From positions 962,086 to 1,026,085 of the forward strand of contig NW_003314325.1 in NCBI RefSeq assembly GCF_000143415.4: a stretch of 64,000 nucleotides of DNA, read 5' to 3'. A program made the translations under genes and the position numbers. Shown in pieces: positions 8,456 to 25,230 of the stretch (position 1 is the stretch's first letter; each line of letters opens with the position of its first letter). The notes beneath the pieces were generated by a model. That model saw nothing but the letters and a program-made list of their open reading frames with translations, did no database searches and was not told the DNA's origin. Source of the DNA: Selaginella moellendorffii (Eukaryota; Plantae; Lycopodiophyta).

Positions 8456-11065
8456 TTATTGTGCTGTGATGTCTCTGGCCTTGGCCGGCTCCATCAGCTT
8501 TTGCGCATCCTCAACCCTGCCGAGCTTGATCAAGCTCTCGGAAAGGATCCTAAACGTCTCCGGGTTTGGCACCGCGCCGCTCTTCCTCGTCGCCTCAAAC
8601 ACCGCATAAGCCTGGTCGATGTTTCCCGTCTTGCAAAGCCCTCCAACGAAGCTCACGCAGCTCACGGGATCCAGCAAGAACTTCTTCTCCCTCATCTGCT
8701 TGTAAACCTCCAGAGCTTCGTCCAGCTTCGTCGCTCGAGACAGTCCCGCGATGAGGATGCGATACGTGCAAGTATCGGCCGCGAGACCTTTGGTTCCCAT
8801 CTCCGCGACGAGCTCGTTCGCTCGGCCCAGCTTCCCCAGCTTGCAAAACCCGTCGATGAGCGTGTTGAAAGTCACAATCGTTGGCTGCAAGCCTGCGCCG
8901 CCGGACATCTCCCTGTAGAGCTTTTCGGCCTCGTCCATGCTGCCCCTCTTGCAGTAGCCGGCGATGAGCGAGTTGTAGGCCACCGCGTCCGGGGGAATGC
9001 ACGCTTGAGTCATCTTCTCGAAGAGCTCCCTGGCTTGGATCACCTTCTCGGCCCGGCAAAGCCCCGCGATGAGAGTCGTGTAAGTGTACTTGTTTGGCTT
9101 GCATCCGGCCTCGAGCATGCTGCCGAAGACTTCCAAGGCCTTCTCCAGTTCCCCCGTCCGGCACAGCCCGTGGATGAGCGTGCTGAAAGTGATCACGTTT
9201 GGGACGTAGCCAGCAGCTCGCATCGCCTCGAAGAGCTTGCAGCCTTCTTCCACCCTTCTGGCTTTGCATACCGCGTCGAGCAGCGTGTTGTAAGTCACCA
9301 CGTCCGGNNNNNNNNNNNNNNNNNNNNNNNNNNNNNNNNNNNNNNNNNNNNNNNNNNNNNNNNNNNNNNNNNNNNNNNNNNNNNNNNNNNNNNNNNNNNN
9401 NNNNNNNACGGGGACGTTTGGTTGGCAGCCGTGCTTGGGCATCTGCTTGAAGCGTTCCGAGGCATCTTTCACCTTCCCCGCTTGGCAGAGGCCGAGTATA
9501 AGCTCGTAGAACATAAGTCTGTCCGGGTGGTGGCCGCCTCGAATCATCTCGTCGAACAGGCTGCTTGCGTGGTCGACTCTCCGTGCCTTGGCTAGCGCTC
9601 GAACGAGGCTCGAGTACGCCTGCATGGACGGCGTCTGTCCTCTCATCACCATCTCGGACAGGATCTTCAAGGACTCGTCAAGCTTGCCGATCTTTGCGAG
9701 GCCGTGGATGAGAATGTGGTACGAGACGTTGTCCGGCTTGTATCCGCTTTCCACCATATGTTGGTATACTTCTCTCGCCTTCTCCATGTTGTTGGACCTC
9801 GCAAAGCCTTGCATGACGCCGTTGAAGGCAAACACGTCGGGGTTACACCCGGCTGCCATCATCTCTTCCAAAACTTTGTAGCTCTCCTCGGGCTTTGCCT
9901 CCTTCACCAGGCTCTTGATGATGGAGCTGTAAGTAAAGACGTTGGCCGCGATGTTCTTGTCTCTCATCTCGGACAAAAGCTTCCTGGCTCCTTCGGTGTT
10001 CCCCGAGCTGCAAAGCCCGGATATGAGAGTGTTGTAAGTCCATCTATCCGGCTCCACTCTCTTCTCGCGTTTCATACTCTGGAACAGATCGAGAGCCTTT
10101 CCAAACTCACCAGCGTTGCAGCGGCTGTTGATGAGGACGTTGTAAGTCACGAGTGACGGTACGCAAGACTCGCTCTTCATCGTCTCGAAGACTTCCAGTG
10201 CCTGTGCCAGCATCCCCGCTTTAGCCAAGCTTTGCACGACGAAGTCATAAGCGTCACCACCTATAGCACACTTGGCCTTGCTCATTCTTTTCAAGATCTC
10301 GTAGACGCGAACTCCCTTTCCGGCTTTCCCAAACGCTGCAACGACGGCAGACCAAGTCTTGGACTCCACGGCCACCTTTTGGGATCCCAGGCAGTCTAGC
10401 ACGCTCTCGATCTCTGCGAGACGCTCCTCCGGCTTCGCTGCGAGGAGCTGGATCAAACTCTCCAGCGTCGTCGAGGATCGAGGAGCAAAGTTGGATGCTA
10501 CCATCGTCTTGAACGCGTCCAAGGCCTTGTCCGTGGAGTTCGTCGCGACGAGAATCTCGAGAAGAACGTTGTGGACGTCCTTCTCAGCCATGAAACCATT
10601 CTTTGCCGCGATCATGGCCTCGCAAGCCGGTATCAAAAGCTTGGATCGACCATCTCTCACCAAGCTGTGAAGAACGAGCTTGAAAGTTTCCTCGTCCACG
10701 TCCAAGAAGCCCGGGCCGCGCTGCTGGATCTGCTGAACGAGCTGGTTCACGACTCTCTTCTGGGCATCGAGGGAGACGCTGGAATGAGAGTAACCGCGCT
10801 GGCCTTCCACCCAGCTCAAGAACTTGAGCGCTACTCGGCGATCTTTGATGGATTTCACGACCTCCACGGCATGCTGGGGCTCTACAAGGCCAGCATTTAG
10901 ACCCTCGAGCCTCTTCGCCGTGTCGGGCGTCCATCCCCCACTGAGAACGCGGCCGATCGTCTCAACCACGTCGATCTTCTTGGAAATCTTGGCCCTTGTG
11001 CTCGCGAATCGCGACTGGAAATTCCTGGAGCTGCTACTTACCTGATTGTAGCACGAGCGTAACAT
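8456..11065 (-). CDS. P-class pentatricopeptide repeat protein, likely organelle-targeted; interrupted by an assembly gap
   Basis: Tandem 35-aa repeats (PDxxTYNTLIxGLC...A..L..EM). R/S-rich N-terminus resembles a mitochondrial presequence. Confidence 0.95.
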   Translation of the reverse strand: MLRSCYNQVSSSSRNFQSRFASTRAKISKKIDVVETIGRVLSGGWTPDTAKRLEGLNAGLVEPQHAVEVVKSIKDRRVALKFLSWVEGQRGYSHSSVSLDAQKRVVNQLVQQIQQRGPGFLDVDEETFKLVLHSLVRDGRSKLLIPACEAMIAAKNGFMAEKDVHNVLLEILVATNSTDKALDAFKTMVASNFAPRSSTTLESLIQLLAAKPEERLAEIESVLDCLGSQKVAVESKTWSAVVAAFGKAGKGVRVYEILKRMSKAKCAIGGDAYDFVVQSLAKAGMLAQALEVFETMKSESCVPSLVTYNVLINSRCNAGEFGKALDLFQSMKREKRVEPDRWTYNTLISGLCSSGNTEGARKLLSEMRDKNIAANVFTYSSIIKSLVKEAKPEESYKVLEEMMAAGCNPDVFAFNGVMQGFARSNNMEKAREVYQHMVESGYKPDNVSYHILIHGLAKIGKLDESLKILSEMVMRGQTPSMQAYSSLVRALAKARRVDHASSLFDEMIRGGHHPDRLMFYELILGLCQAGKVKDASERFKQMPKHGCQPNVPXXXXXXXXXXXXXXXXXXXXXXXXXXXXXXXXXXPDVVTYNTLLDAVCKARRVEEGCKLFEAMRAAGYVPNVITFSTLIHGLCRTGELEKALEVFGSMLEAGCKPNKYTYTTLIAGLCRAEKVIQARELFEKMTQACIPPDAVAYNSLIAGYCKRGSMDEAEKLYREMSGGAGLQPTIVTFNTLIDGFCKLGKLGRANELVAEMGTKGLAADTCTYRILIAGLSRATKLDEALEVYKQMREKKFLLDPVSCVSFVGGLCKTGNIDQAYAVFEATRKSGAVPNPETFRILSESLIKLGRVEDAQKLMEPAKARDITAQ
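9308..9407. other. Assembly gap (100 N)
   Basis: Run of 100 N inside the PPR ORF. Confidence 1.
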
Positions 11066-16443: not shown

Positions 16444-17811
16444 ATGGAGAGAGCAGAGGCTGCGAGGAAACGGCGGCGCGTAGCCGGGTATGATACAGGG
16501 GAATCCTGGCAGCAGATCAAGGCGCTAAATTGCAAGGATCTGGTCAAGCCCAACCAGGTGACCATTGTTCCTTACATGGACGCTCGTAATCGAGGCTCTT
16601 TTCTTTTCGTGGGGTCACCGGACATGGATGAATTGCTGTGGCACTGCCTGTCTCTCGAACCCGGGCAAGAGCTTGTTGTTGTCGGTCCCAAGGGCACCGG
16701 CAAAAGCTGCCGGTTAAGGGCAATGGCTGCCGCGCTCTATGCGCGTGGCCCGGAGAAGAGTGTGATCGTTTGCGTGTGGAACTTGGAGAGTGCCAGCTCG
16801 CCGGCTGTGTTGCTGCGACGGCTGCTTGATGGGCTACGCTTTGCATACTCGGGCGCGGACGAGCACAAGCCGGTTCTCGAGGCTCTCGAGGCTCTTTGGA
16901 GGATGGGCGTGAGCGTAGCGAGGCTTCAAGAGTTTCTCAGGGAGAGGGCAGCCGCTGGTGACGATTTTACATTCGTTGCTGACGGTGCCGAGGCTCTGGA
17001 TACTCGCGATTACAGTGGCACCAAAAAAGTGGGCTCTAAGGAGCTGAAAGATACCTTGTTGACGCTCGAAGCCATCGTTTCTCCCTACAAAATCGTGTGG
17101 GGCGCGTCCCCGGAAGCGCGCCAGGCAGAGGCCGCCGACTCGGAGCGAGTAGCGATCTATTGTGTCGGAGGTTTTACCAAGGTTTGGTCGTTTCTATACT
17201 TCTCGTGCTCGCCAACTAAATCCCGGCTGCAGGAACAAAGGGAAGTCTTTCTTCTTCACTCCGTGCTGGGAGCCGTCGTAGCTGGTGATGTGCAGCGGAC
17301 CAAGGACATGGATTTCTTCGCTGGTTTCCATCCCCAGTTTCTGGATGAGCTGGATGGGGCTTGCATGGAGATAGCTCGGATCAAGCAGGCAGGCGGACGC
17401 AAATCAAGGCTTTTGTGGGGGGACACCGTGAGACTTGCTCCACCGGTTGAGCTGGAGCCACATGAAGTCTCTTTACTTTTGAAAGACGAGGAAGATTGGC
17501 AGAGGGTGCTCCTGGAGTTTATCAACGGACGAACAATGTCTTTCGTCCGCAGATCAGTCCAGCAAGTCGTGCGAATGTTGGACAATGCAGAAGCTATATG
17601 CAACTTCCACGGGAAAGCGCAAACGATCGATAAGGATCCAAGGTACTCTGTATCAGAGCACGAGTTCTGCTCGTGTTTCGTGGAGCAGATCTACATGGAG
17701 GAGTTTCGAAAGGCCCAAAGCTGTCCTCAGCAGGAGCATGCAGCATGGTGGAATATATTAAGAGGTAATGACTGGCAAGCAAGACTAAAAGGCAAGAACT
17801 CCAGTGCATGA
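16444..17811 (+). CDS. P-loop NTPase, Crinkler-associated NTPase-like; probable in-frame intron 17182-17232
   Basis: Walker A LVVVGPKGTGKS and Walker B-like FTFVADG. Later motifs WGAS, GGFT, AGFHPQFL and DPRY follow the order remembered for fungal CRN-type NTPases. Splice sites AAG|GTTTGG ... CTGCAG|GAA. Confidence 0.65.
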   Translation: MERAEAARKRRRVAGYDTGESWQQIKALNCKDLVKPNQVTIVPYMDARNRGSFLFVGSPDMDELLWHCLSLEPGQELVVVGPKGTGKSCRLRAMAAALYARGPEKSVIVCVWNLESASSPAVLLRRLLDGLRFAYSGADEHKPVLEALEALWRMGVSVARLQEFLRERAAAGDDFTFVADGAEALDTRDYSGTKKVGSKELKDTLLTLEAIVSPYKIVWGASPEARQAEAADSERVAIYCVGGFTKVWSFLYFSCSPTKSRLQEQREVFLLHSVLGAVVAGDVQRTKDMDFFAGFHPQFLDELDGACMEIARIKQAGGRKSRLLWGDTVRLAPPVELEPHEVSLLLKDEEDWQRVLLEFINGRTMSFVRRSVQQVVRMLDNAEAICNFHGKAQTIDKDPRYSVSEHEFCSCFVEQIYMEEFRKAQSCPQQEHAAWWNILRGNDWQARLKGKNSSA

Positions 17812-18579: not shown

Positions 18580-21500
18580 ATGAGGGCGATCGTTGTGGCG
18601 GGGACATGCAGCGGGGCGGGCAAGAGCAGCATCGCGCTCGGCCTCATGGCGGCCTACACGCGCCGCGGCCTTCGCGTCCATCCATTCAAGATTGGCCCCG
18701 GTGAGTGATAAATGCTCTTGAGCTCTAAGATTCCTACCTCCTCCGCGCTCTAGATTTCTCGGATCCAATGCATCACAAGGCCGCGACGGGGCACGATTCT
18801 TACAATCTGGATAGCTGGATGATGAGCAGGCGAGTGAAAATCCCAAGAACTCTTCGCGAATTTTGATATCCCTTTGTATTCTCCAGAGAGGCGAACCAAG
18901 CGTGCTTCATTCGATGCGCTCCAGCTACTGACGTTGCAATCGTGGAAGGAGTCTTTGGAATGTTTGATGGCCGCGATGGGAAATCCGAGGCCGGAAGCAC
19001 TGCCGAAATGGCCAAGATTTTGGGAGCTCCGGTTCTTCTCGTGCTTGATACCAGAGGATTTGCTCGAAGTGCCGCAGCTTTGATTCGAGGATACACCGCT
19101 TTCGATCCAGAAGTCACCTTTGCTGGAATTATCTTCAACAAGGTTTGCTACTAAGTTTTCTCGTTCCTAGTTTATCTTTTTTCTTGTTTTCTTCTATGTA
19201 GCTGGAGAGCTCCGCTCACAAGGCTTGGCTTATGGAAGCTGTGTCTGCCATCGATTCAAGCGTTAAAGTTCTCGGTGGCATTCCTATCGTAGACGGCTTG
19301 CATTTGGCTGAGAATCAGTTCTACCCGAGCCTGAGTGGTGAAGAAGCAGTACCGGCGAGCTACATTCAAGTTTTTGCCGATTTGATTGAGCATCACGTCG
19401 ACTTGGATGGTCTGTTAGAGGCTGCCGGTGTGTGGAAGCCAAAGGGTGGCCCGAACTTTTACTTGGAAAACATCCGTTCAGCGCTGCCTTATGCCAAAGT
19501 CCGCATCGGAGTCGCGAGGGATGCTGCCTTTTGCCTCTATTACCAGGAGAATCTCTCGTTGCTTCAAGGTAATTATTTCGTTTTTCTCTCTTAAGTTGCG
19601 GATTTCTTGTCCTTCTGACAGACGCCGGAGCAGAAATAGTTTTCTTTTCACCTTTGAAGGACTCCCTCCCGACGAGACTGGATGCTATTATCTTTGGAGG
19701 TGGCTATTTGAAGCATCACTTGGAGAAGCTATCTCTGAACAAGAAACTCCTCTACGCGGTGCGAGCATTCGCTGATGCCGGAGGAATTATCTATGGAGAA
19801 GCTGGAGGCGCTATGTACTTGTCACAAGGCATCGAGGTATGGTGTCCAAATGTTAGTTCTTGCGTGGTGCAGAATGACGTTGTCCTTGCAGACAGACAAG
19901 CACCAGCCGTTCACTATGTGCGGCGTTTTTCCTTTTTGGACACGAATGAAATTAGGAGCGACAACAAAAGAATATGTCAAGGTTTGTTTGGTTTTCATTA
20001 TTTGCTTCTTCGTTCGACATTATCAAGAATAAACAGGCAACAACACAAGAAAGTTGCGTATTGTTTCCTCCTCATATTGGCGAAATTCGCGGATACATGT
20101 TAAACTGTAGCGAGGTCTTTTGGCTGCAGGCAGATGGTATAAACATCTGTCCGAGAGGGTACGCCAGTTTATTTGTTTGTTTATTGTCATTTTGATTTTG
20201 TGAATTGCGACAGGTTCGTGTTGAAGTATGAAACCTCAGAAAAGATGGAAGAAGTAGAAGGCTACATGCAAGGAAATGCAATGGCTACGTTTGCGCGGCT
20301 TCATTTCGGCAGCAACCCGGCTATAGTTCACGCTCTCATAGAGCGCTGCAGGTTTGCTCATTCGCCTTTTGCTCCTAACTTCTGACTTATGGCTGAAAAA
20401 TCTTCCAGAATGGATTCGTCCAAAGCTGCTGCCGTTGCCGCTGCTTCTGCTTCTGCAGTAGCGCATGCCGGCCCAGCAGCAGCAGCGGCCGCTGGCTCGG
20501 CTGCAGCAAGAGCTGTGACAGCGGCCCTCGGAGAATCGAGGGAGATGTCCCCTTCCCGTATGGAACGCACAAAGTTTCACGGCAAGCTATCTAGTGGTGA
20601 GTGGAGTGAGCGCGGAAGAGATCCGTTTAGGAGACATACAAGGTCTCTCAGTTCAAGTCCTGTTTACACACGCCTTACTATCGACGAGGAGTGTCCCGAC
20701 ATCGAAGTTGACATCAAAGAGACGACTGAGGATGGCTCTTCTGCCAGGATTGCAAGGTCTAAATCCGAGGTTTGGGATGCTCGCGGACAGGATGCTTTGT
20801 CCCCACAAGATCTTACAGAGGCTGTCACGTCGATGGATGATCAGTTCATAAGTGAGGAGGGTCGAGCAGCTGGGCGACAGTGTTTAGTGACGACGACAAG
20901 AAGAATGGACCCGAATCAAGGCATTTATGTGCCTTTCAACGTGAAAGTGATACCACACAAGATCGTGTCGCTCTTTCCAGTGGCTACGGAGATCCTTCTT
21001 AAGCTTGGTAAAGTTTCCTTGTATTTCTAGTAAAGTTGTACTGTGACACACGCTTTTAGTTTCTGGCAGGGGCTGGACACCGTTTGCTTGGGGTGACCGA
21101 TGCGTGTGATAAGCCGGCTGGAGTCAGAATGGGACGACATATTGTAAGTGTCGTGTTTTGCGCTTGAAAGGTTTTTTTACTATGTTCATGAAAACGTATA
21201 TTGCAGGTGTGTCGCAACCAGCAGCGATCCAGCATTGGGAAGGAGAATGAGTTGTCGTACAAACTCGATCTCCCATGGCTTTCGAAGACCAAGCCTCATT
21301 TAATTATCACTCAGGTTAGAAAATTTCTTTTGAGAATGTCATAACGTGAGGCTTTTGTTCATGCAGAAAGTGTGCTCTCTGTGCTACATGGATAGCAAAG
21401 ACGTGACTGAAGAGATTACCAGAGCAGGCCTCCAAGATACGAGGCTGTTCGTTGTAAATCCACACACGGTACGAGGAAATCTAGCTCTCCATAAGTCGGT

Positions 21501-22165
21501 GCTGATTTTCACTCCTTAGTTATCTGATATCTGGGCGTTCATCATGGATCTTGCGGACATGCTGGGTTTGTACAAGGAAGCCTGCCAACTTATAAACTCC
21601 CTCCGACTCCGCTTGAGAAGAATCGCTGCTAGTGTGGCTGTCCATCACCAGCCGAGACTGCTTCTCCTTCAAGGCCTCGATCCGCTTACTCTCGGGGGCC
21701 GATGGATTGCGGAGATGGAAATCCTGTCCGGTGCCTACGACGGCTTGCAAAAACCAGGCTGTGCGTCTGAGAGGCTACACTGGCAACGTATCACATCCTA
21801 CGCTCCCGAGTTTATTATTCTGGCTCCTTGTTCCACATCCGTCGAGCAGACATTGTCCGAGGTACTTGTTTACGATTCCCCATATCTTTGTCTGCTGATT
21901 TTCGTGCTTCCAGGTGCACAAGCTCGCCAGACAGCCGGGGTTTTGGTCCGTGCCGGCGGTGGAGTCTCGACAAGTCTACATTTGCGACGGATCATACTTC
22001 AGCCAACCCGGTTTGAGGGTGGTGGAGGGAATGGAGCTTGTGGCTCACATCCTCCACCCATCTACAGTCTCGGCTCCATCTGCCAGTGGAGTGCTGAAGC
22101 TTTCGCTCAAGCCGGGGCAAAAATGCCGTCCAGAGGAGCTCTACAGGCACTTTTTAGTCGAGTGA
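18580..22165 (+). CDS. Multi-exon fusion: cobyrinate a,c-diamide synthase-like (CbiA/CobB P-loop + GATase_3) - Ala/Ser-rich linker - BtuF/cobalamin-Fe-chelate periplasmic-binding-protein-like domain
   Basis: Spliced translation: MRAIVVAGTCSGAGKSSIALGLMAAYTRRGLRVHPFKIGPDFSDPMHH..SYNLDSWMM..IVEGVFGMFDG..GSTAEMAKILGAPVLLVLD..GIIFNK..RIGVARDAAFCLYYQENLSLL..GAEIVFFSPL..GGGY..YGEAGGAMYL..LHFGSNP, then KIVSLFPVATEILLKLGAGHRLLGVTDACDKP..KPHLIITQKVC..GGRWIAEM..APEFIILAPC..W SVPAVESRQVYICDGSYFSQPGLRVVEGMELVAHILHP. Introns include 18701-18753, 18830-18886 (GC-AG), 19143-19201, 19569-19621, 19837-19891, 19982-20036, 20352-20408 and 21008-21069. Confidence 0.88.
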
Positions 22166-23389
22166 AACGGTGGTGTATCAGGTACTTTGCTTGTTTCTTT
22201 CCTTTACTTTCTTTCTCTTTCCCGGCTGCTCGAAGCCACTGAGTGCTCACGGACTTTGCGGCGTGGTTTCTCGCAGGATCGTGATCAGACATTCGCTCCC
22301 AGGGGCCCAACCAAAGATTAGTGGGTTATGATCAAGAAAAAGACCCAACCAATGTGCGCATCATGACTGCTGCGTGCTAAAAAGAAAGAGAAGAAGAACA
22401 AACACTCCCTTGGTTGGAGATTGGAGAATTCAATGCATCTTAAAGGTAAGCAGCAATCGCTTTTCAATCTAGAGTTCGATTGACTATTGAATTCTCTTTT
22501 TTGCTTAAATTTTTCTAGAAGCCCATGATGGTATCAATCGACCTCAAACCGACCCATTACAGAAAGTGGAGGAGATAGCAAAGCATGACGCAAAACGCGG
22601 GTGCCATGCGAGCCGTCCGATCTAGGGCTTGGAACTTTGACAAAAGGTGGTGGTGCGCAAATAAAGATTTTTCCTTAGTCCACTGGCGTGATATTTCCAA
22701 ACTTGCATGTGACTTGCCCATGTTCGCGTGCCGAGATTGTCAAAAAATGGGCTCGAAAGTTTCCAAGAACCGAAAGAGAACAAAACAAGCGAGCGAGCAA
22801 CAAATTTAACGAACGAATCAAGCAGGAGTGTGGACGGACGTCGTGAGAGCAAGAGCAGGAAGAAAAAAAAAGAAAAAAAGAAAGCACTTTGAAACAATGG
22901 AAAGAAAAAATAGACAACCATGTTGTCAAACATTTGTATTCCAAGGTTGCATTTTTTGGGGGCCCCGCCTGGCAAATTTAGCGGTCACGTAGGATGACGT
23001 TGGCCGGGGTGGCGGGGTGGGATATAATATAATCTCGCGCTCCAACTTTTAGGGTTCTTGCGTGGCTCACATTTTCAAGAACCTTTTTCTCGCTTGGCTT
23101 TTTTTCCACTGTTTGTTGGAGGGTGGTGGCGCTTGTGCCACTGCTGTGATCGATCCTCCGCCTTTTTTCTTTCTCACAGTAGTGATGTTGAGAGTTTTCC
23201 AAAAAGTCAAACTGGTGGGGAGGATGCTAGACTGCGATGAATCCATAGTGATGAAGATCGAAGAATGCAGGGACAAGGGATTGGCGGTGGTGGGATTAGC
23301 TTAGCCGATCCATCGATCGATTACCAAACGAGGAAAGATTCATAGAGAGGATTTGAATTGGAGGCAAGAAGAAAGGAGAAAAGAAAGAC

Positions 23390-25230
23390 ATGAGTCGATC
23401 GAATAGGAGGGTCTACCCACCGGGAAAGCTTCCACTCCAACACCCTCTGTTCGTGGAAGAGGACCCCCCAAACGACGAGAAATCGAGGTGGGCGACTGCG
23501 CCTCCCAACAGCGGCGGATTTGAGAGCCCTGTGATCGCCGTCCCTTTCAAATGGGAGCTCGAGCCAGGTGTTCCCAAACAAAAGCTCGATCGCCAAGAAC
23601 ACCAGCATCGCTGGAGGAGAGACGAGGAGCTGTTGGCGAAGAAGAGCCCACCACCACCAACTGCTGACCGGGCGACGGTGGTCGAAAAGGATCTCCAACA
23701 GAGTGATCATCCCGGGAGCGCCTCCCCGTCGCCATCGCCATCGCCATCTTCCTCCTCCTCCTCCTCCTCCTCTCTTGCTCCACCCCCGCGATTGATGGTG
23801 ATAAGCAGCAGCACTGGTAGAAAAGCTGGGCCGGCGCTCAGCTCTCCTCGCTCTCCCAGATCCATTTCCCTGTCCCGCAAGATGAAAAGCTTGCTCCAGG
23901 GGAAGCTGGCATCGCCCAGGAAGATCTTCTCGGAGCAGCAGCAGCAGCAGCGCTCGAGCCTGTGGGAGTGTGAATCCGGAAAGGTAGTCCAGGAGTTGGA
24001 TCGTCGCGTCGAGGAAGAACTGGTGGACCGCCGGTGCTGCGTTTCGAGGTGTTGCTCCAGCAACGATATAGTCTTCGAGGGAGAGCTTCTCGATCTTCAT
24101 CACCATCCGAAGCATCCACCACCACCAGCGCCGGCGGGATCGATGCCTTTCAAGAACATGTCCAGCATGCTCCTCGAGCTCTGGTATGGCGGTGGAGGAT
24201 CCAGCTCCGAGTTCCCGAGAAGTCCTGTCCCTGGCTTTTTCCGTGACGAGTTTCCACTCCAGAGCTCCGGTGGCTCTAGCACTGCGAGTAGTAGCGAGTT
24301 TCCAATCCAGAGCTCTGGTTCTAGCACTGCGACTAGTAGCAAGAGCATTGCCTCGCCCGTGACAAGCTCGTCCTCTTCTTCCAGCGACCTGGAGAGCCCC
24401 GGCAGCAGCACGGACAACTCGCTCGGTAGCTTCTCCAGCAGTGACTCCTCCTCTCACCACCATCAAATCTTGCACGTCCCCCGCCACGACCACGAGTTTC
24501 AGACGAGCTTTGATTCCTGCGACGAAGTCAAGCTCTTCGGTTACGCCTCGGACGACGACGAGTACGGCGGTGGCTTCGACTTCGCTGCCGCCGCCAGCCG
24601 CGAGTTCTTCGCCAAAAACTTCTACTACCACTCGGACAGGTTCCGCGTCGAGTCGTGCGACTCTCCCTCGCTGCTCGGCGTCAAGCAGCTCGCTCGCTCG
24701 GCAGTGCCAGTGCCACCGCTCCCCAGCGCTCTCAAGTCGGGGAAGAACTCCAAGAAGTGCTTGAAGAAGGTGAGGTTCGCCTGTGTCGAGGAAGAAGTCG
24801 AGCCGGAGAAGGCCGAGGATGGTCCGGAAGTTGACGAGGAAGAGGACGATGAACTCGTGGTTGCTTCGCCATCGCCGACGAGTCCTGCTCTGTCCCGTTT
24901 CTCGTCGAGGCCAGCGTCGCGGTTCTGTAGCATCGAGGAGGACGACGATGGCGGCTTCTACCGGGACTCAGACGAGCTCTCCTCCGAGCCGTGCAGTCCT
25001 TCGCCTCGTTGTGCCAGAAGAGATCCATCTCAACTCTTGCTGCGGATCATCCAAGCCGATGCCGAGTCCAGCCGGAAGAACAAAGGCGCTCTTAAGGTAC
25101 GATCTTCTCCATAACGAATTTTCTTTTGTTTCTTTCGTCTGGTTTCTTCGGTTCGTTCTCTAAGTTGAAAGGTGACGGCTCGTTTTTTGTTTGTGCGCAG
25201 TCTATGTTTGGTTCACGTTCGCGCTGGTAA
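23390..25230 (+). CDS. Ser/acidic low-complexity plant protein with DUF688-like VPFxWExxPG motif; probable last intron 25097-25200
   Basis: 574-codon ORF with AVPFKWELEPGVPK. Splice AAG|GTACGA ... GCGCAG|TCT gives a C-terminus SMFGSRSRW*. Confidence 0.75.

What the first reader, a model, noticed from the sequence alone, without database searches (positions are those of the whole stretch)
19790..20320. Glutaminase half of the CbiA-like protein looks catalytically dead while the ATPase half is kept
Seen: the nucleophile motif YAECGG reads YGEAGG (Ala codon GCT at 19801-19803). RGHEFHYS reads RGYMLNCS, SYxHxHF reads TFARLHF, GGGYPE reads GGGYLK, and the LPSRHLGL linker motif is gone. The P-loop and VEG motifs persist. 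Established: class I glutamine amidotransferases need this Cys and His. Inference: it is a pseudo-amidotransferase that uses free ammonia or another amine, or acts as a nucleotide-gated switch coupled to the binding domain.
Basis: partly seen in the sequence, partly recalled or inferred. Interest (0 to 1): 0.72.

Follow-up and report, generated by a model that had tools for sequence, protein, structure and literature searches.

The report
Plant B12-type enzyme with dead glutaminase
A spikemoss gene for a vitamin-B12-type amide-adding enzyme has lost the residues that split glutamine but keeps the rest under selection, and a clubmoss and a fern-like relative share the loss, so vascular plants appear to have used a changed enzyme for over 400 million years.

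Summary
The stretch lies in a spliced, expressed 14-exon gene (18580-22165, +, 953 aa). It is an allele of Selaginella moellendorffii LOC9659294. The protein is a CobB/CbiA-type a,c-diamide synthetase joined by a linker to a BtuF/heme-binding-like domain.

The glutaminase nucleophile reads Ala (GCT, 19801-19803) in the DNA, in RNA contigs of four studies and in the second haplotype. The catalytic His reads Arg. The GGGYPE, RGxxxH and PERHLGL motifs are also lost.

This is not family-wide. Green algae, streptophyte algae, mosses and Marchantia keep Cys and His. It is also not private decay. A clubmoss and a fern-like transcript carry Ser at the nucleophile and share five other losses, which points to one loss before lycophytes and ferns split.

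The dead domain still folds with high confidence. It is 60-62% identical among vascular plants, as conserved as the ATP-binding half, against 16-20% in the linker. The ATP-site residues are intact.

The likeliest reading is a glutamine-independent, probably ammonia-using, ATP-dependent amidoligase, as in human CPS1. No assay exists.

The scan noted the same fusion on another piece of this genome (s1-402642), but not the dead glutaminase.

The parts
18580..22165 (+). Whole coding region. It has 14 exons and encodes 953 aa plus a stop. The exons are 18580-18700, 18754-18829, 18887-19142, 19202-19568, 19622-19836, 19892-19981, 20037-20158, 20214-20351, 20409-21007, 21070-21143, 21207-21314, 21367-21468, 21520-21861 and 21914-22165.
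   Evidence: Spliced RNA contigs from four studies show every joint. Introns are 51-63 nt and GT..AG, except intron 2, which is GC..AG. The reading frame stays open across all exons.
18580..19320 (+). ATP-binding synthetase half (DTBS-like, CobB/CbiA N-domain), exons 1 to 4. It holds the P-loop at 18601-18627 and IVEGV at 18939-18953.
   Evidence: Each exon hits the NCBIfam CobB models. It keeps 48 of 54 columns that are at least 90% conserved in Cys-bearing homologues, including K15, D41, D44, N58, D60 and E86.
19298..19321 (+). Degenerate interdomain motif: LHLAENQF where homologues have (L)PERHLGL.
   Evidence: Alignment. L191F and G192Y are changed. The AlphaFold model has pLDDT below 50 at residues 190-198.
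19496..20351 (+). Glutaminase-like (GATase_3) domain, residues about 250-462: the end of exon 4 through exon 8.
   Evidence: Pfam PF07685 scores 76.5 bits on allele P0001, against 105.4 for Marchantia. pLDDT is mostly above 90. Foldseek matches GatD with TM 0.62-0.66.
19696..19713 (+). GGGYLK in place of GGGYPE. Position 303 is Pro to Leu. Position 304 is K in this allele and E in the other haplotype.
19801..19803 (+). Ala codon GCT at the glutaminase nucleophile position (residue 334, motif YGEAGG at 19792-19809).
   Evidence: RNA contigs are identical here. The position aligns with the PdxT and GatD nucleophile Cys.
20088..20111 (+). RGYMLNCS in place of RG(H/Q)xFH(Y/F)S. The conserved His398 reads Asn (20103-20105).
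20296..20298 (+). Arg codon CGG at the catalytic His position (residue 444, motif TFARLHF at 20287-20307).
20352..20408 (+). Intron 8. It is retained in one contig (run X1). Read-through meets a stop at 20383-20385 and would give a product with only the CbiA-like half.
20409..21007 (+). Exon 9. It holds a conserved Ala-rich segment (residues 463-505), a poorly conserved linker, and the start of the binding domain.
   Evidence: The Ala-rich part is 74-86% identical among land plants. The linker is 16-25% identical.
20940..22162 (+). C-terminal BtuF/heme-binding-like (class III periplasmic-binding-protein fold) domain: the end of exon 9 through exon 14.
   Evidence: Pfam PF01497 scores 22.2 bits on allele P0001, below the 27.5 cut-off; Marchantia and Diphasiastrum pass at 43 bits, while the fern-like P0154 scores 25.4, also below the cut-off. 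A profile search hits solved B12- and heme-binding proteins with E from 1e-24 to 1e-8. The AlphaFold model has pLDDT 88.9 and matches PhuT and BtuF.

Best explanation
The gene encodes a probably cytosolic protein; it has no N-terminal extension. The protein has three parts: (1) a CobB/CbiA-type ATP-dependent carboxylate-amidating 'synthetase' domain, (2) the glutaminase domain that normally feeds it ammonia, and (3) a tetrapyrrole-binding-protein-like domain (BtuF/heme type).

In the ancestor of vascular plants the glutaminase site was inactivated. The nucleophile Cys became Ser, and the glutamine-site Pro303 and His398 and the PERHLGL interdomain motif were lost. In the Selaginella line Ser then became Ala, and the catalytic His became Arg. 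These steps are shown by sequence comparison.

The dead domain has been kept as a folded, constrained scaffold. The synthetase active-site residues have also been kept. This too is shown.

Inferred: the protein still binds ATP and activates a tetrapyrrole or corrinoid acetate side chain, but it cannot draw nitrogen from glutamine. It would either take free ammonia, as human CPS1 does after the same Cys-to-Ser change, or work without amidation.
For: - Gene structure and expression.
- Ala at the nucleophile in the DNA, in RNA of four studies and in both haplotypes.
- Nucleophile and His assignment. GatD C94A and H189A are inactive (PMC5871853).
- Orthologue states. Cys is kept in 33 of the 41 aligned sequences. 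Diphasiastrum has Ser, the fern-like P0154 has Ser (codon TCA), and Selaginella has Ala (GCT). This fits the path TGY to TCN to GCN.
- The three vascular-plant sequences form one clade with SH-aLRT 94. They share six changes at positions that are otherwise at least 90% conserved.
- Synthetase invariants kept: 48 of 54.
- The dead domain is 60-62% identical among lycophyte and fern lineages, against 57-60% for the synthetase half and 16-20% for the linker.
- Its branch length relative to the synthetase half is not raised: ratio 0.73-1.01, against 1.08-1.23 in bryophytes.
- The model is confident (pLDDT 87.9, pTM 0.88) and the GATase fold matches GatD.
- CPS1 precedent: Cys to Ser, external ammonia (PMC4655335).
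- From my own memory, not checked here: purified P. denitrificans CobB and Salmonella CbiA accept ammonia at millimolar Km.
Against: - No biochemical data exist for any eukaryotic member.
- The vascular-plant sample is only three full sequences plus one partial fern sequence.
- The His assignment rests on weak local alignments.
- Both N-terminal domains evolve about 1.5-2 times faster in vascular plants than in bryophytes, and six of 54 synthetase positions have changed. Some loss of synthetase function cannot be excluded.
- No seed-plant orthologue was seen, so the function is dispensable in some lineages.
- The substrate is unknown.
- Land plants other than hornworts are reported to lack B12-dependent enzymes (PMC11439496).
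Confidence: 0.6

Rival explanations
1. Slow decay after loss of purpose. With B12 metabolism gone from vascular plants, the whole CbiA-like half is losing function. Only the binding domain, or nothing, still matters, and the gene is on its way out, as in seed plants.
For: Branches are longer in vascular plants in both N-terminal domains. Six of 54 synthetase and nine of 45 glutaminase conserved positions have changed. Position 304 is polymorphic K/E within the species. No seed-plant orthologue appears among the hits. The literature reports no B12 enzymes in vascular plants.
Against: The 953-codon frame is intact in two haplotypes and the mRNA is fully spliced in four studies. There are no amino-acid differences between haplotypes in residues 1-234, against four synonymous changes. 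The N-terminal domains are 57-62% identical across roughly 400 million years, against 16-20% in the linker. Mosses and Marchantia also lack B12 enzymes and yet keep Cys and His, so the loss does not simply track B12 use.
Confidence: 0.15
2. Non-catalytic nucleotide switch. The N-terminal half binds or hydrolyses ATP only to control ligand capture or release by the BtuF-like domain, and no amide is made.
For: The P-loop is kept. The fusion to a binding domain is conserved from algae to ferns. Loss of the PERHLGL motif and the disordered loop at residues 190-198 suggest the link between the two catalytic sites is gone.
Against: The residues kept include the acidic PDxxDP, NLD and VEG motifs typical of the ligase chemistry of this family, not just the nucleotide site. 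The family belongs to the DTBS/CTP-synthase-like amidoligases by fold, not to the MinD/ParA dimer switches. Cys-bearing algal members have the same fusion, so the fusion itself does not imply a switch.
Confidence: 0.2
3. The glutaminase is still active, through another nucleophile or a partner subunit.
For: Fern and clubmoss sequences carry Ser, which could in principle act as a nucleophile, and they keep the catalytic His.
Against: Selaginella has Ala and Arg at the two dyad positions, and has also lost P303 and H398. Cys-to-Ser CPS1 cannot use glutamine (PMC4655335). No Cys-bearing Selaginella paralogue appeared among the 120 best of 221 hits.
Confidence: 0.04
4. Artefact: an assembly error, a wrong exon model, or RNA editing hides a normal Cys.
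For: None found.
Against: In all four runs, each from a different study, the contig over exon 5 (19620-19834) has no difference from the window. The independent haplotype protein has the same residues.
Confidence: 0.01

Closest known systems
Bacterial cobyrinic/hydrogenobyrinic acid a,c-diamide synthase (CbiA/CobB; NCBIfam NF002204, TIGR00379)
   Same: The same two-domain N-terminal architecture. The allele's N-half scores 382 and 350 bits, above the cut-offs of 254 and 261. The P-loop, PDxxDP, NLD and VEG motifs are conserved.
   Different: The Cys-His glutaminase dyad, the GGGYPE, RGHEFH and PERHLGL motifs are lost. It is fused to a linker and a binding-protein domain. The host is a eukaryote with no known corrin pathway, and the gene has spliceosomal introns.
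Eukaryotic CobB-BtuF fusion orthologues in green algae, streptophyte algae, mosses and Marchantia
   Same: The same three-part architecture and one well-supported clade. They are 52-62% identical in the N-half to Selaginella.
   Different: They keep Cys334, His398 and His444 and, mostly, PERHLGL. None has been studied in the papers searched.
Human/mammalian carbamoyl phosphate synthetase 1 (CPS1) glutaminase-like domain
   Same: A class I-type glutaminase domain is retained, folded but inactive, after the nucleophile Cys was replaced by Ser. The synthetase takes external ammonia (PMC4655335). The same first step (Cys to Ser) is inferred here.
   Different: The synthetase chemistry and fold are unrelated. 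Ammonia use is proven for CPS1 and only inferred here. Selaginella has gone further (Ala, and His to Arg).
GatD of the MurT-GatD lipid II amidotransferase (GATase_3 family)
   Same: The closest solved structure to the glutaminase-like domain (Foldseek TM 0.62-0.66). It has a Cys-His dyad without Glu. C94A and H189A are inactive (PMC5871853).
   Different: GatD is a separate subunit with an intact dyad, and its partner synthetase is Mur-ligase-like.
CTP synthase
   Same: The closest solved two-domain architecture: a DTBS-like amidoligase domain plus a GATase domain.
   Different: Overall TM is low (0.3). The substrate is different, the glutaminase is active, and there is no binding-protein fusion.
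Ni-sirohydrochlorin a,c-diamide synthase CfbB (coenzyme F430 pathway)
   Same: It is homologous over the full N-half (333 bits). The chemistry is the same on a different tetrapyrrole (PMC7242693).
   Different: The score is far below the curated cut-off (560). No methanogen context, and the glutaminase is dead.

Membership tests
CobB/CbiA a,c-diamide synthase (NF002204 / TIGR00379) | Full-length match above the curated model cut-off | tested here: met
   The allele P0001:1-478 scores 382.3 bits (cut-off 254) and 350.2 bits (cut-off 261.4). Window exons 1-5 each hit the same models.
CobB/CbiA a,c-diamide synthase (NF002204 / TIGR00379) | ATP-binding synthetase domain with P-loop GxxSGxGK[ST] and the acidic motifs PDxxDP, NLD and VEG | tested here: met
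   GTCSGAGKS, GPDFSDP, NLDSW and IVEGV are present. 48 of 54 conserved columns are kept.
CobB/CbiA a,c-diamide synthase (NF002204 / TIGR00379) | Glutaminase nucleophile Cys in the (A/G)ECGG motif | tested here: not met
   Ala, codon GCT at 19801-19803, in DNA, RNA and both haplotypes.
CobB/CbiA a,c-diamide synthase (NF002204 / TIGR00379) | Catalytic His (first His of SYxHxHF) | tested here: not met
   Arg, codon CGG at 20296-20298.
CobB/CbiA a,c-diamide synthase (NF002204 / TIGR00379) | Glutamine- and ATP-dependent amidation of the a and c acetate side chains of a corrin | not testable with these tools
   This needs an enzyme assay.
CobB/CbiA a,c-diamide synthase (NF002204 / TIGR00379) | Occurs alongside the other corrin-biosynthesis genes | not tested
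   Only a word search of the scan's notes was made. The literature says plants do not make B12 (PMC11439496).
CfbB Ni-sirohydrochlorin a,c-diamide synthase (NF033195) | Score above the curated cut-off | tested here: not met
   333 bits against a cut-off of 560.
Active class I / GATase_3 glutamine amidotransferase | GATase alpha/beta fold | tested here: met
   PF07685 scores 76.5 bits. pLDDT is mostly above 90. GatD matches with TM 0.62-0.66.
Active class I / GATase_3 glutamine amidotransferase | Cys-His catalytic dyad | tested here: not met
   Ala334 and Arg444.
Retained pseudo-glutaminase domain feeding an ammonia-using synthetase (CPS1 type) | Nucleophile replaced while the domain stays folded and constrained and the synthetase site stays intact | tested here: met
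Retained pseudo-glutaminase domain feeding an ammonia-using synthetase (CPS1 type) | The synthetase uses free ammonia | not testable with these tools
   This needs an ammonium-dependent amidation assay.
Class III periplasmic-binding-protein fold (PF01497; BtuF, heme-binding proteins), C-terminal half | Pfam match above cut-off, and the fold | tested here: inconclusive
   The Selaginella allele scores 22.2 bits, below 27.5; Marchantia and Diphasiastrum pass at 43 bits, while the fern-like P0154 scores 25.4, also below the cut-off. A profile hits solved B12- and heme-binding proteins at E from 1e-24 to 1e-8. The fold matches PhuT and BtuF with TM 0.5-0.69. The ligand is unknown.

The most novel reading that the evidence does not exclude
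Vascular plants that are thought to ignore vitamin B12 keep, under selection, a cytosolic ATP-dependent enzyme that binds a corrinoid or another tetrapyrrole through its BtuF-like domain. It would amidate or otherwise process that ligand with free ammonia instead of glutamine. This would be an undescribed tetrapyrrole-handling or repair pathway, rewired more than 400 million years ago. The recurrent loss of the nucleophile (at least five times in eukaryotes) would mark repeated switches of nitrogen source or of function.
Probability: 0.25. Interest if true: 0.8.

Novelty: new variant of a known kind. Interest (0 to 1): 0.55.

Why it matters
CobB/CbiA enzymes are known only from prokaryotic B12 and F430 synthesis. 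A conserved eukaryotic branch fused to a tetrapyrrole-binding-like domain has no described role.

Finding that vascular plants inactivated its glutaminase site early, yet kept the whole protein, has three consequences:
- It splits the family into a likely active form (algae, mosses, Marchantia) and a glutamine-independent form (lycophytes, ferns).
- It provides natural 'mutants' for working out what the protein does.
- It adds a second natural case, next to CPS1, of an amidotransferase that kept a dead glutaminase domain.

It also bears on the open question of how much B12-related metabolism survived in land plants (PMC11439496). Mosses and Marchantia are tractable, so the function can be tested directly.

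Tried and rejected
- Pfam on single exons gave little. NCBIfam was more useful.
- Single exons against solved structures gave nothing.
- The word search with the glutaminase-like domain alone found only bacterial fragments and no further plant sequences.
- The exact look-up of the Diphasiastrum protein's locus failed, so its Ser codon is unknown.
- Debussche 1990 (PMC526805) is not held. The ammonia Km values for CobB and CbiA are therefore from memory only.
- Literature searches for the plant or algal protein found only a passing mention of a CobB-like transcript in a haptophyte.
- I considered a link between loss of Cys and loss of the PERHLGL motif and rejected it as a rule. Riccia lost Cys but keeps the motif, and several Cys-bearing algae lack it.
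- I considered a simple link to loss of B12 use and did not adopt it. Mosses and Marchantia lack METH but keep Cys.
- The database allele P0001 stood in for it.
- Residue-level contacts in the model could not be read, because no coordinates are returned.
Full report
**What is there**

Six-frame reading showed CbiA-like pieces in different frames.

Contigs of four public runs from four different studies lie on the stretch in spliced form. They define 13 coding introns of 51-63 nt, plus one intron in the 3' UTR. Eleven of the 13 coding joints stand in all four runs and the other two in three. All introns are GT..AG except intron 2, which is GC..AG.

With these joints the frame stays open from the ATG at 18580 to the stop at 22163-22165. 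That is 14 exons and 953 codons.

Exons were searched by reference. For full-length work I used the database protein P0001, 'uncharacterized protein LOC9659294 isoform X2 [Selaginella moellendorffii]'. It differs from the window's exons at 13 of the 934 aligned residues. It also lacks 19 residues at the start of exon 13, and it is evidently the other haplotype or another isoform.

**Check of the observation**

- YGEAGG, with Ala GCT at 19801-19803.
- GGGYLK.
- RGYMLNCS.
- TFARLHF.
- LHLAENQF in place of PERHLGL.
- An intact P-loop and VEG.

The contig over exon 5 has no difference from the window in any of the four runs. The other haplotype also reads Ala. Sequencing error and RNA editing are therefore excluded.

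A profile of the glutaminase domains places this Ala on the nucleophile Cys of PdxT and GatD. A profile of the C-terminal part places the first His of SYxHxHF on the 'YFHG' His of GatD. That alignment is weak on its own, but it hits the same proteins. GatD C94A and H189A are inactive (PMC5871853). In the window this His is Arg.

**Family**

Exons 1-5 hit the CobB/CbiA models. The allele's N-half passes the curated cut-offs of NF002204 (382 against 254) and TIGR00379 (350 against 261). It does not pass that of CfbB (333 against 560).

The C-terminal half is a class III binding-protein fold. Its nearest solved relatives, by profile and by fold, are heme- and B12-binding proteins.

A search with exon 13 against 1.8 billion representatives, followed by a word search with P0001, found the same fusion widely:
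- Chlorophytes: Chloropicon, Ostreococcus, Trebouxia, Micractinium and others.
- A haptophyte.
- Streptophyte algae: Chlorokybus, Mesotaenium, Spirogloea, Chara.
- Liverworts, mosses, the clubmoss Diphasiastrum and the fern Pteridium (partial sequence).

No seed plant appeared. No paper on the protein was found. The survey of B12-related genes in plants does not mention it (PMC11439496).

**Is the Cys loss fixed?**

The answer depends on the clade.
- The nucleophile is Cys in 33 of the 41 aligned sequences, including all 15 bacteria, the mosses and Marchantia.
- It is Ala in Selaginella.
- It is Ser in Diphasiastrum and in P0154. P0154 is a transcript whose nearest named relative is Pteridium.
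- It is Gly in two Riccia species and in Elliptochloris.
- It is Ser in Tetraselmis and in a short Asterochloris protein.

On a tree of the N-halves the eukaryotes form one clade, and so do the land plants (SH-aLRT 99 for each). Selaginella, Diphasiastrum and P0154 group together (94). At least five changes of state are needed on the tree.

The three vascular-plant sequences share changes at six positions that are at least 90% conserved in the Cys-bearing sequences: G153, L191, G192, P303, C334 and H398. The codons fit a path from Cys through Ser to Ala, TGY to TCN to GCN. P0154 has TCA and Selaginella has GCT.

The simplest reading is one inactivation before lycophytes and ferns split, with further erosion in Selaginella (His444 to Arg).

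**Is the dead domain decaying?**

No.
- Among the three vascular lineages it is 60-62% identical. The synthetase half is 57-60% identical and the linker 16-20%.
- On a fixed topology its branch length relative to the synthetase half is 0.73-1.01 in vascular plants. In bryophytes the ratio is 1.08-1.23.
- An AlphaFold model of the N-half is confident (pLDDT 87.9, pTM 0.88). Only the former PERHLGL loop (residues 190-198) falls below 50.
- The glutaminase-like part matches GatD, and the two-domain layout matches CTP synthases.
- Within the species, the haplotypes show no amino-acid difference in residues 1-234, against four synonymous changes.
- Position 304, the Glu of GGGYPE, is K in one haplotype and E in the other. 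This fits a glutamine site that no longer matters.

**Mechanism**

Shown:
- The glutaminase dyad is gone.
- The loss is old and shared.
- The domain and the ATP-site residues (48 of 54 conserved columns, including K15, D41, D44, N58, D60 and E86) are kept.
- The gene is expressed.

Inferred:
- The protein still carries out ATP-dependent chemistry on a bound tetrapyrrole-like ligand, without glutamine.
- Free ammonia is the obvious nitrogen source. CPS1 made the same Cys-to-Ser change and takes external ammonia (PMC4655335). From memory, purified CobB and CbiA accept ammonia at millimolar Km.

A non-catalytic switch role, or partial decay, cannot be excluded without assays.

**Verdict**

This is a new variant of a known enzyme kind.

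The scan had already noted the fusion on this window (s1-411619) and on another piece of the genome (s1-402642). The dead glutaminase and its age are what this report adds.

Noticed in passing
window 20352-20408: One contig of run X1 retains intron 8. Read-through stops at 20383-20385 and would give a protein with only the CbiA-like half and no binding domain. It could be unspliced RNA or a real short isoform.
   Followed up: no
window 21520-21576: The NCBI isoform X2 (P0001) lacks the first 19 residues of exon 13, which suggests an alternative acceptor. All four RNA runs laid here use the acceptor at 21520.
   Followed up: partly
window 20410-20540: The Ala-rich segment just after the enzyme half looks like low complexity. 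Yet it is 74-86% identical from mosses to ferns, it is present in Chara, and it is absent from Mesotaenium and the chlorophytes. Its role is unknown (a hinge, or a membrane or partner contact?).
   Followed up: partly
window 18830-18886: Intron 2 uses GC..AG ends. All the other introns of the gene are GT..AG.
   Followed up: yes
window 22179-22273: An intron of about 95 nt lies in the 3' UTR, downstream of the stop codon. It is spliced out in all four runs.
   Followed up: no
window 16444-17811: An intronless 455-aa ORF lies just upstream on the same strand. It gives only weak P-loop NTPase matches (AAA_22 and AAA_16, below the Pfam cut-offs). Function unknown.
   Followed up: partly
window 23390-25114: A 574-aa Ser-rich ORF lies downstream, with no Pfam match. 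A long ORF overlaps it on the opposite strand (23321-24631).
   Followed up: partly
window 9308-9407: A run of 100 N (an assembly gap).
   Followed up: no
P0158 and P0010 (Chara braunii CBR_g32417 and CBR_g32415): In Chara the enzyme half and the binding half are annotated as two separate gene models on one contig, with gene numbers two apart. This is either a real split or a mis-called single gene.
   Followed up: no
P0204, P0235 (Prorocentrum, Polarella): Dinoflagellates have CobB-like domains fused to Kelch repeats and a PF17653 domain instead of the BtuF-like domain.
   Followed up: no
P0016, P0023, P0076 (metagenomic or algal members): Some members keep the nucleophile Cys but have Gln or Arg at the catalytic His position. 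The glutaminase may therefore be impaired in more lineages than the Cys count shows.
   Followed up: partly
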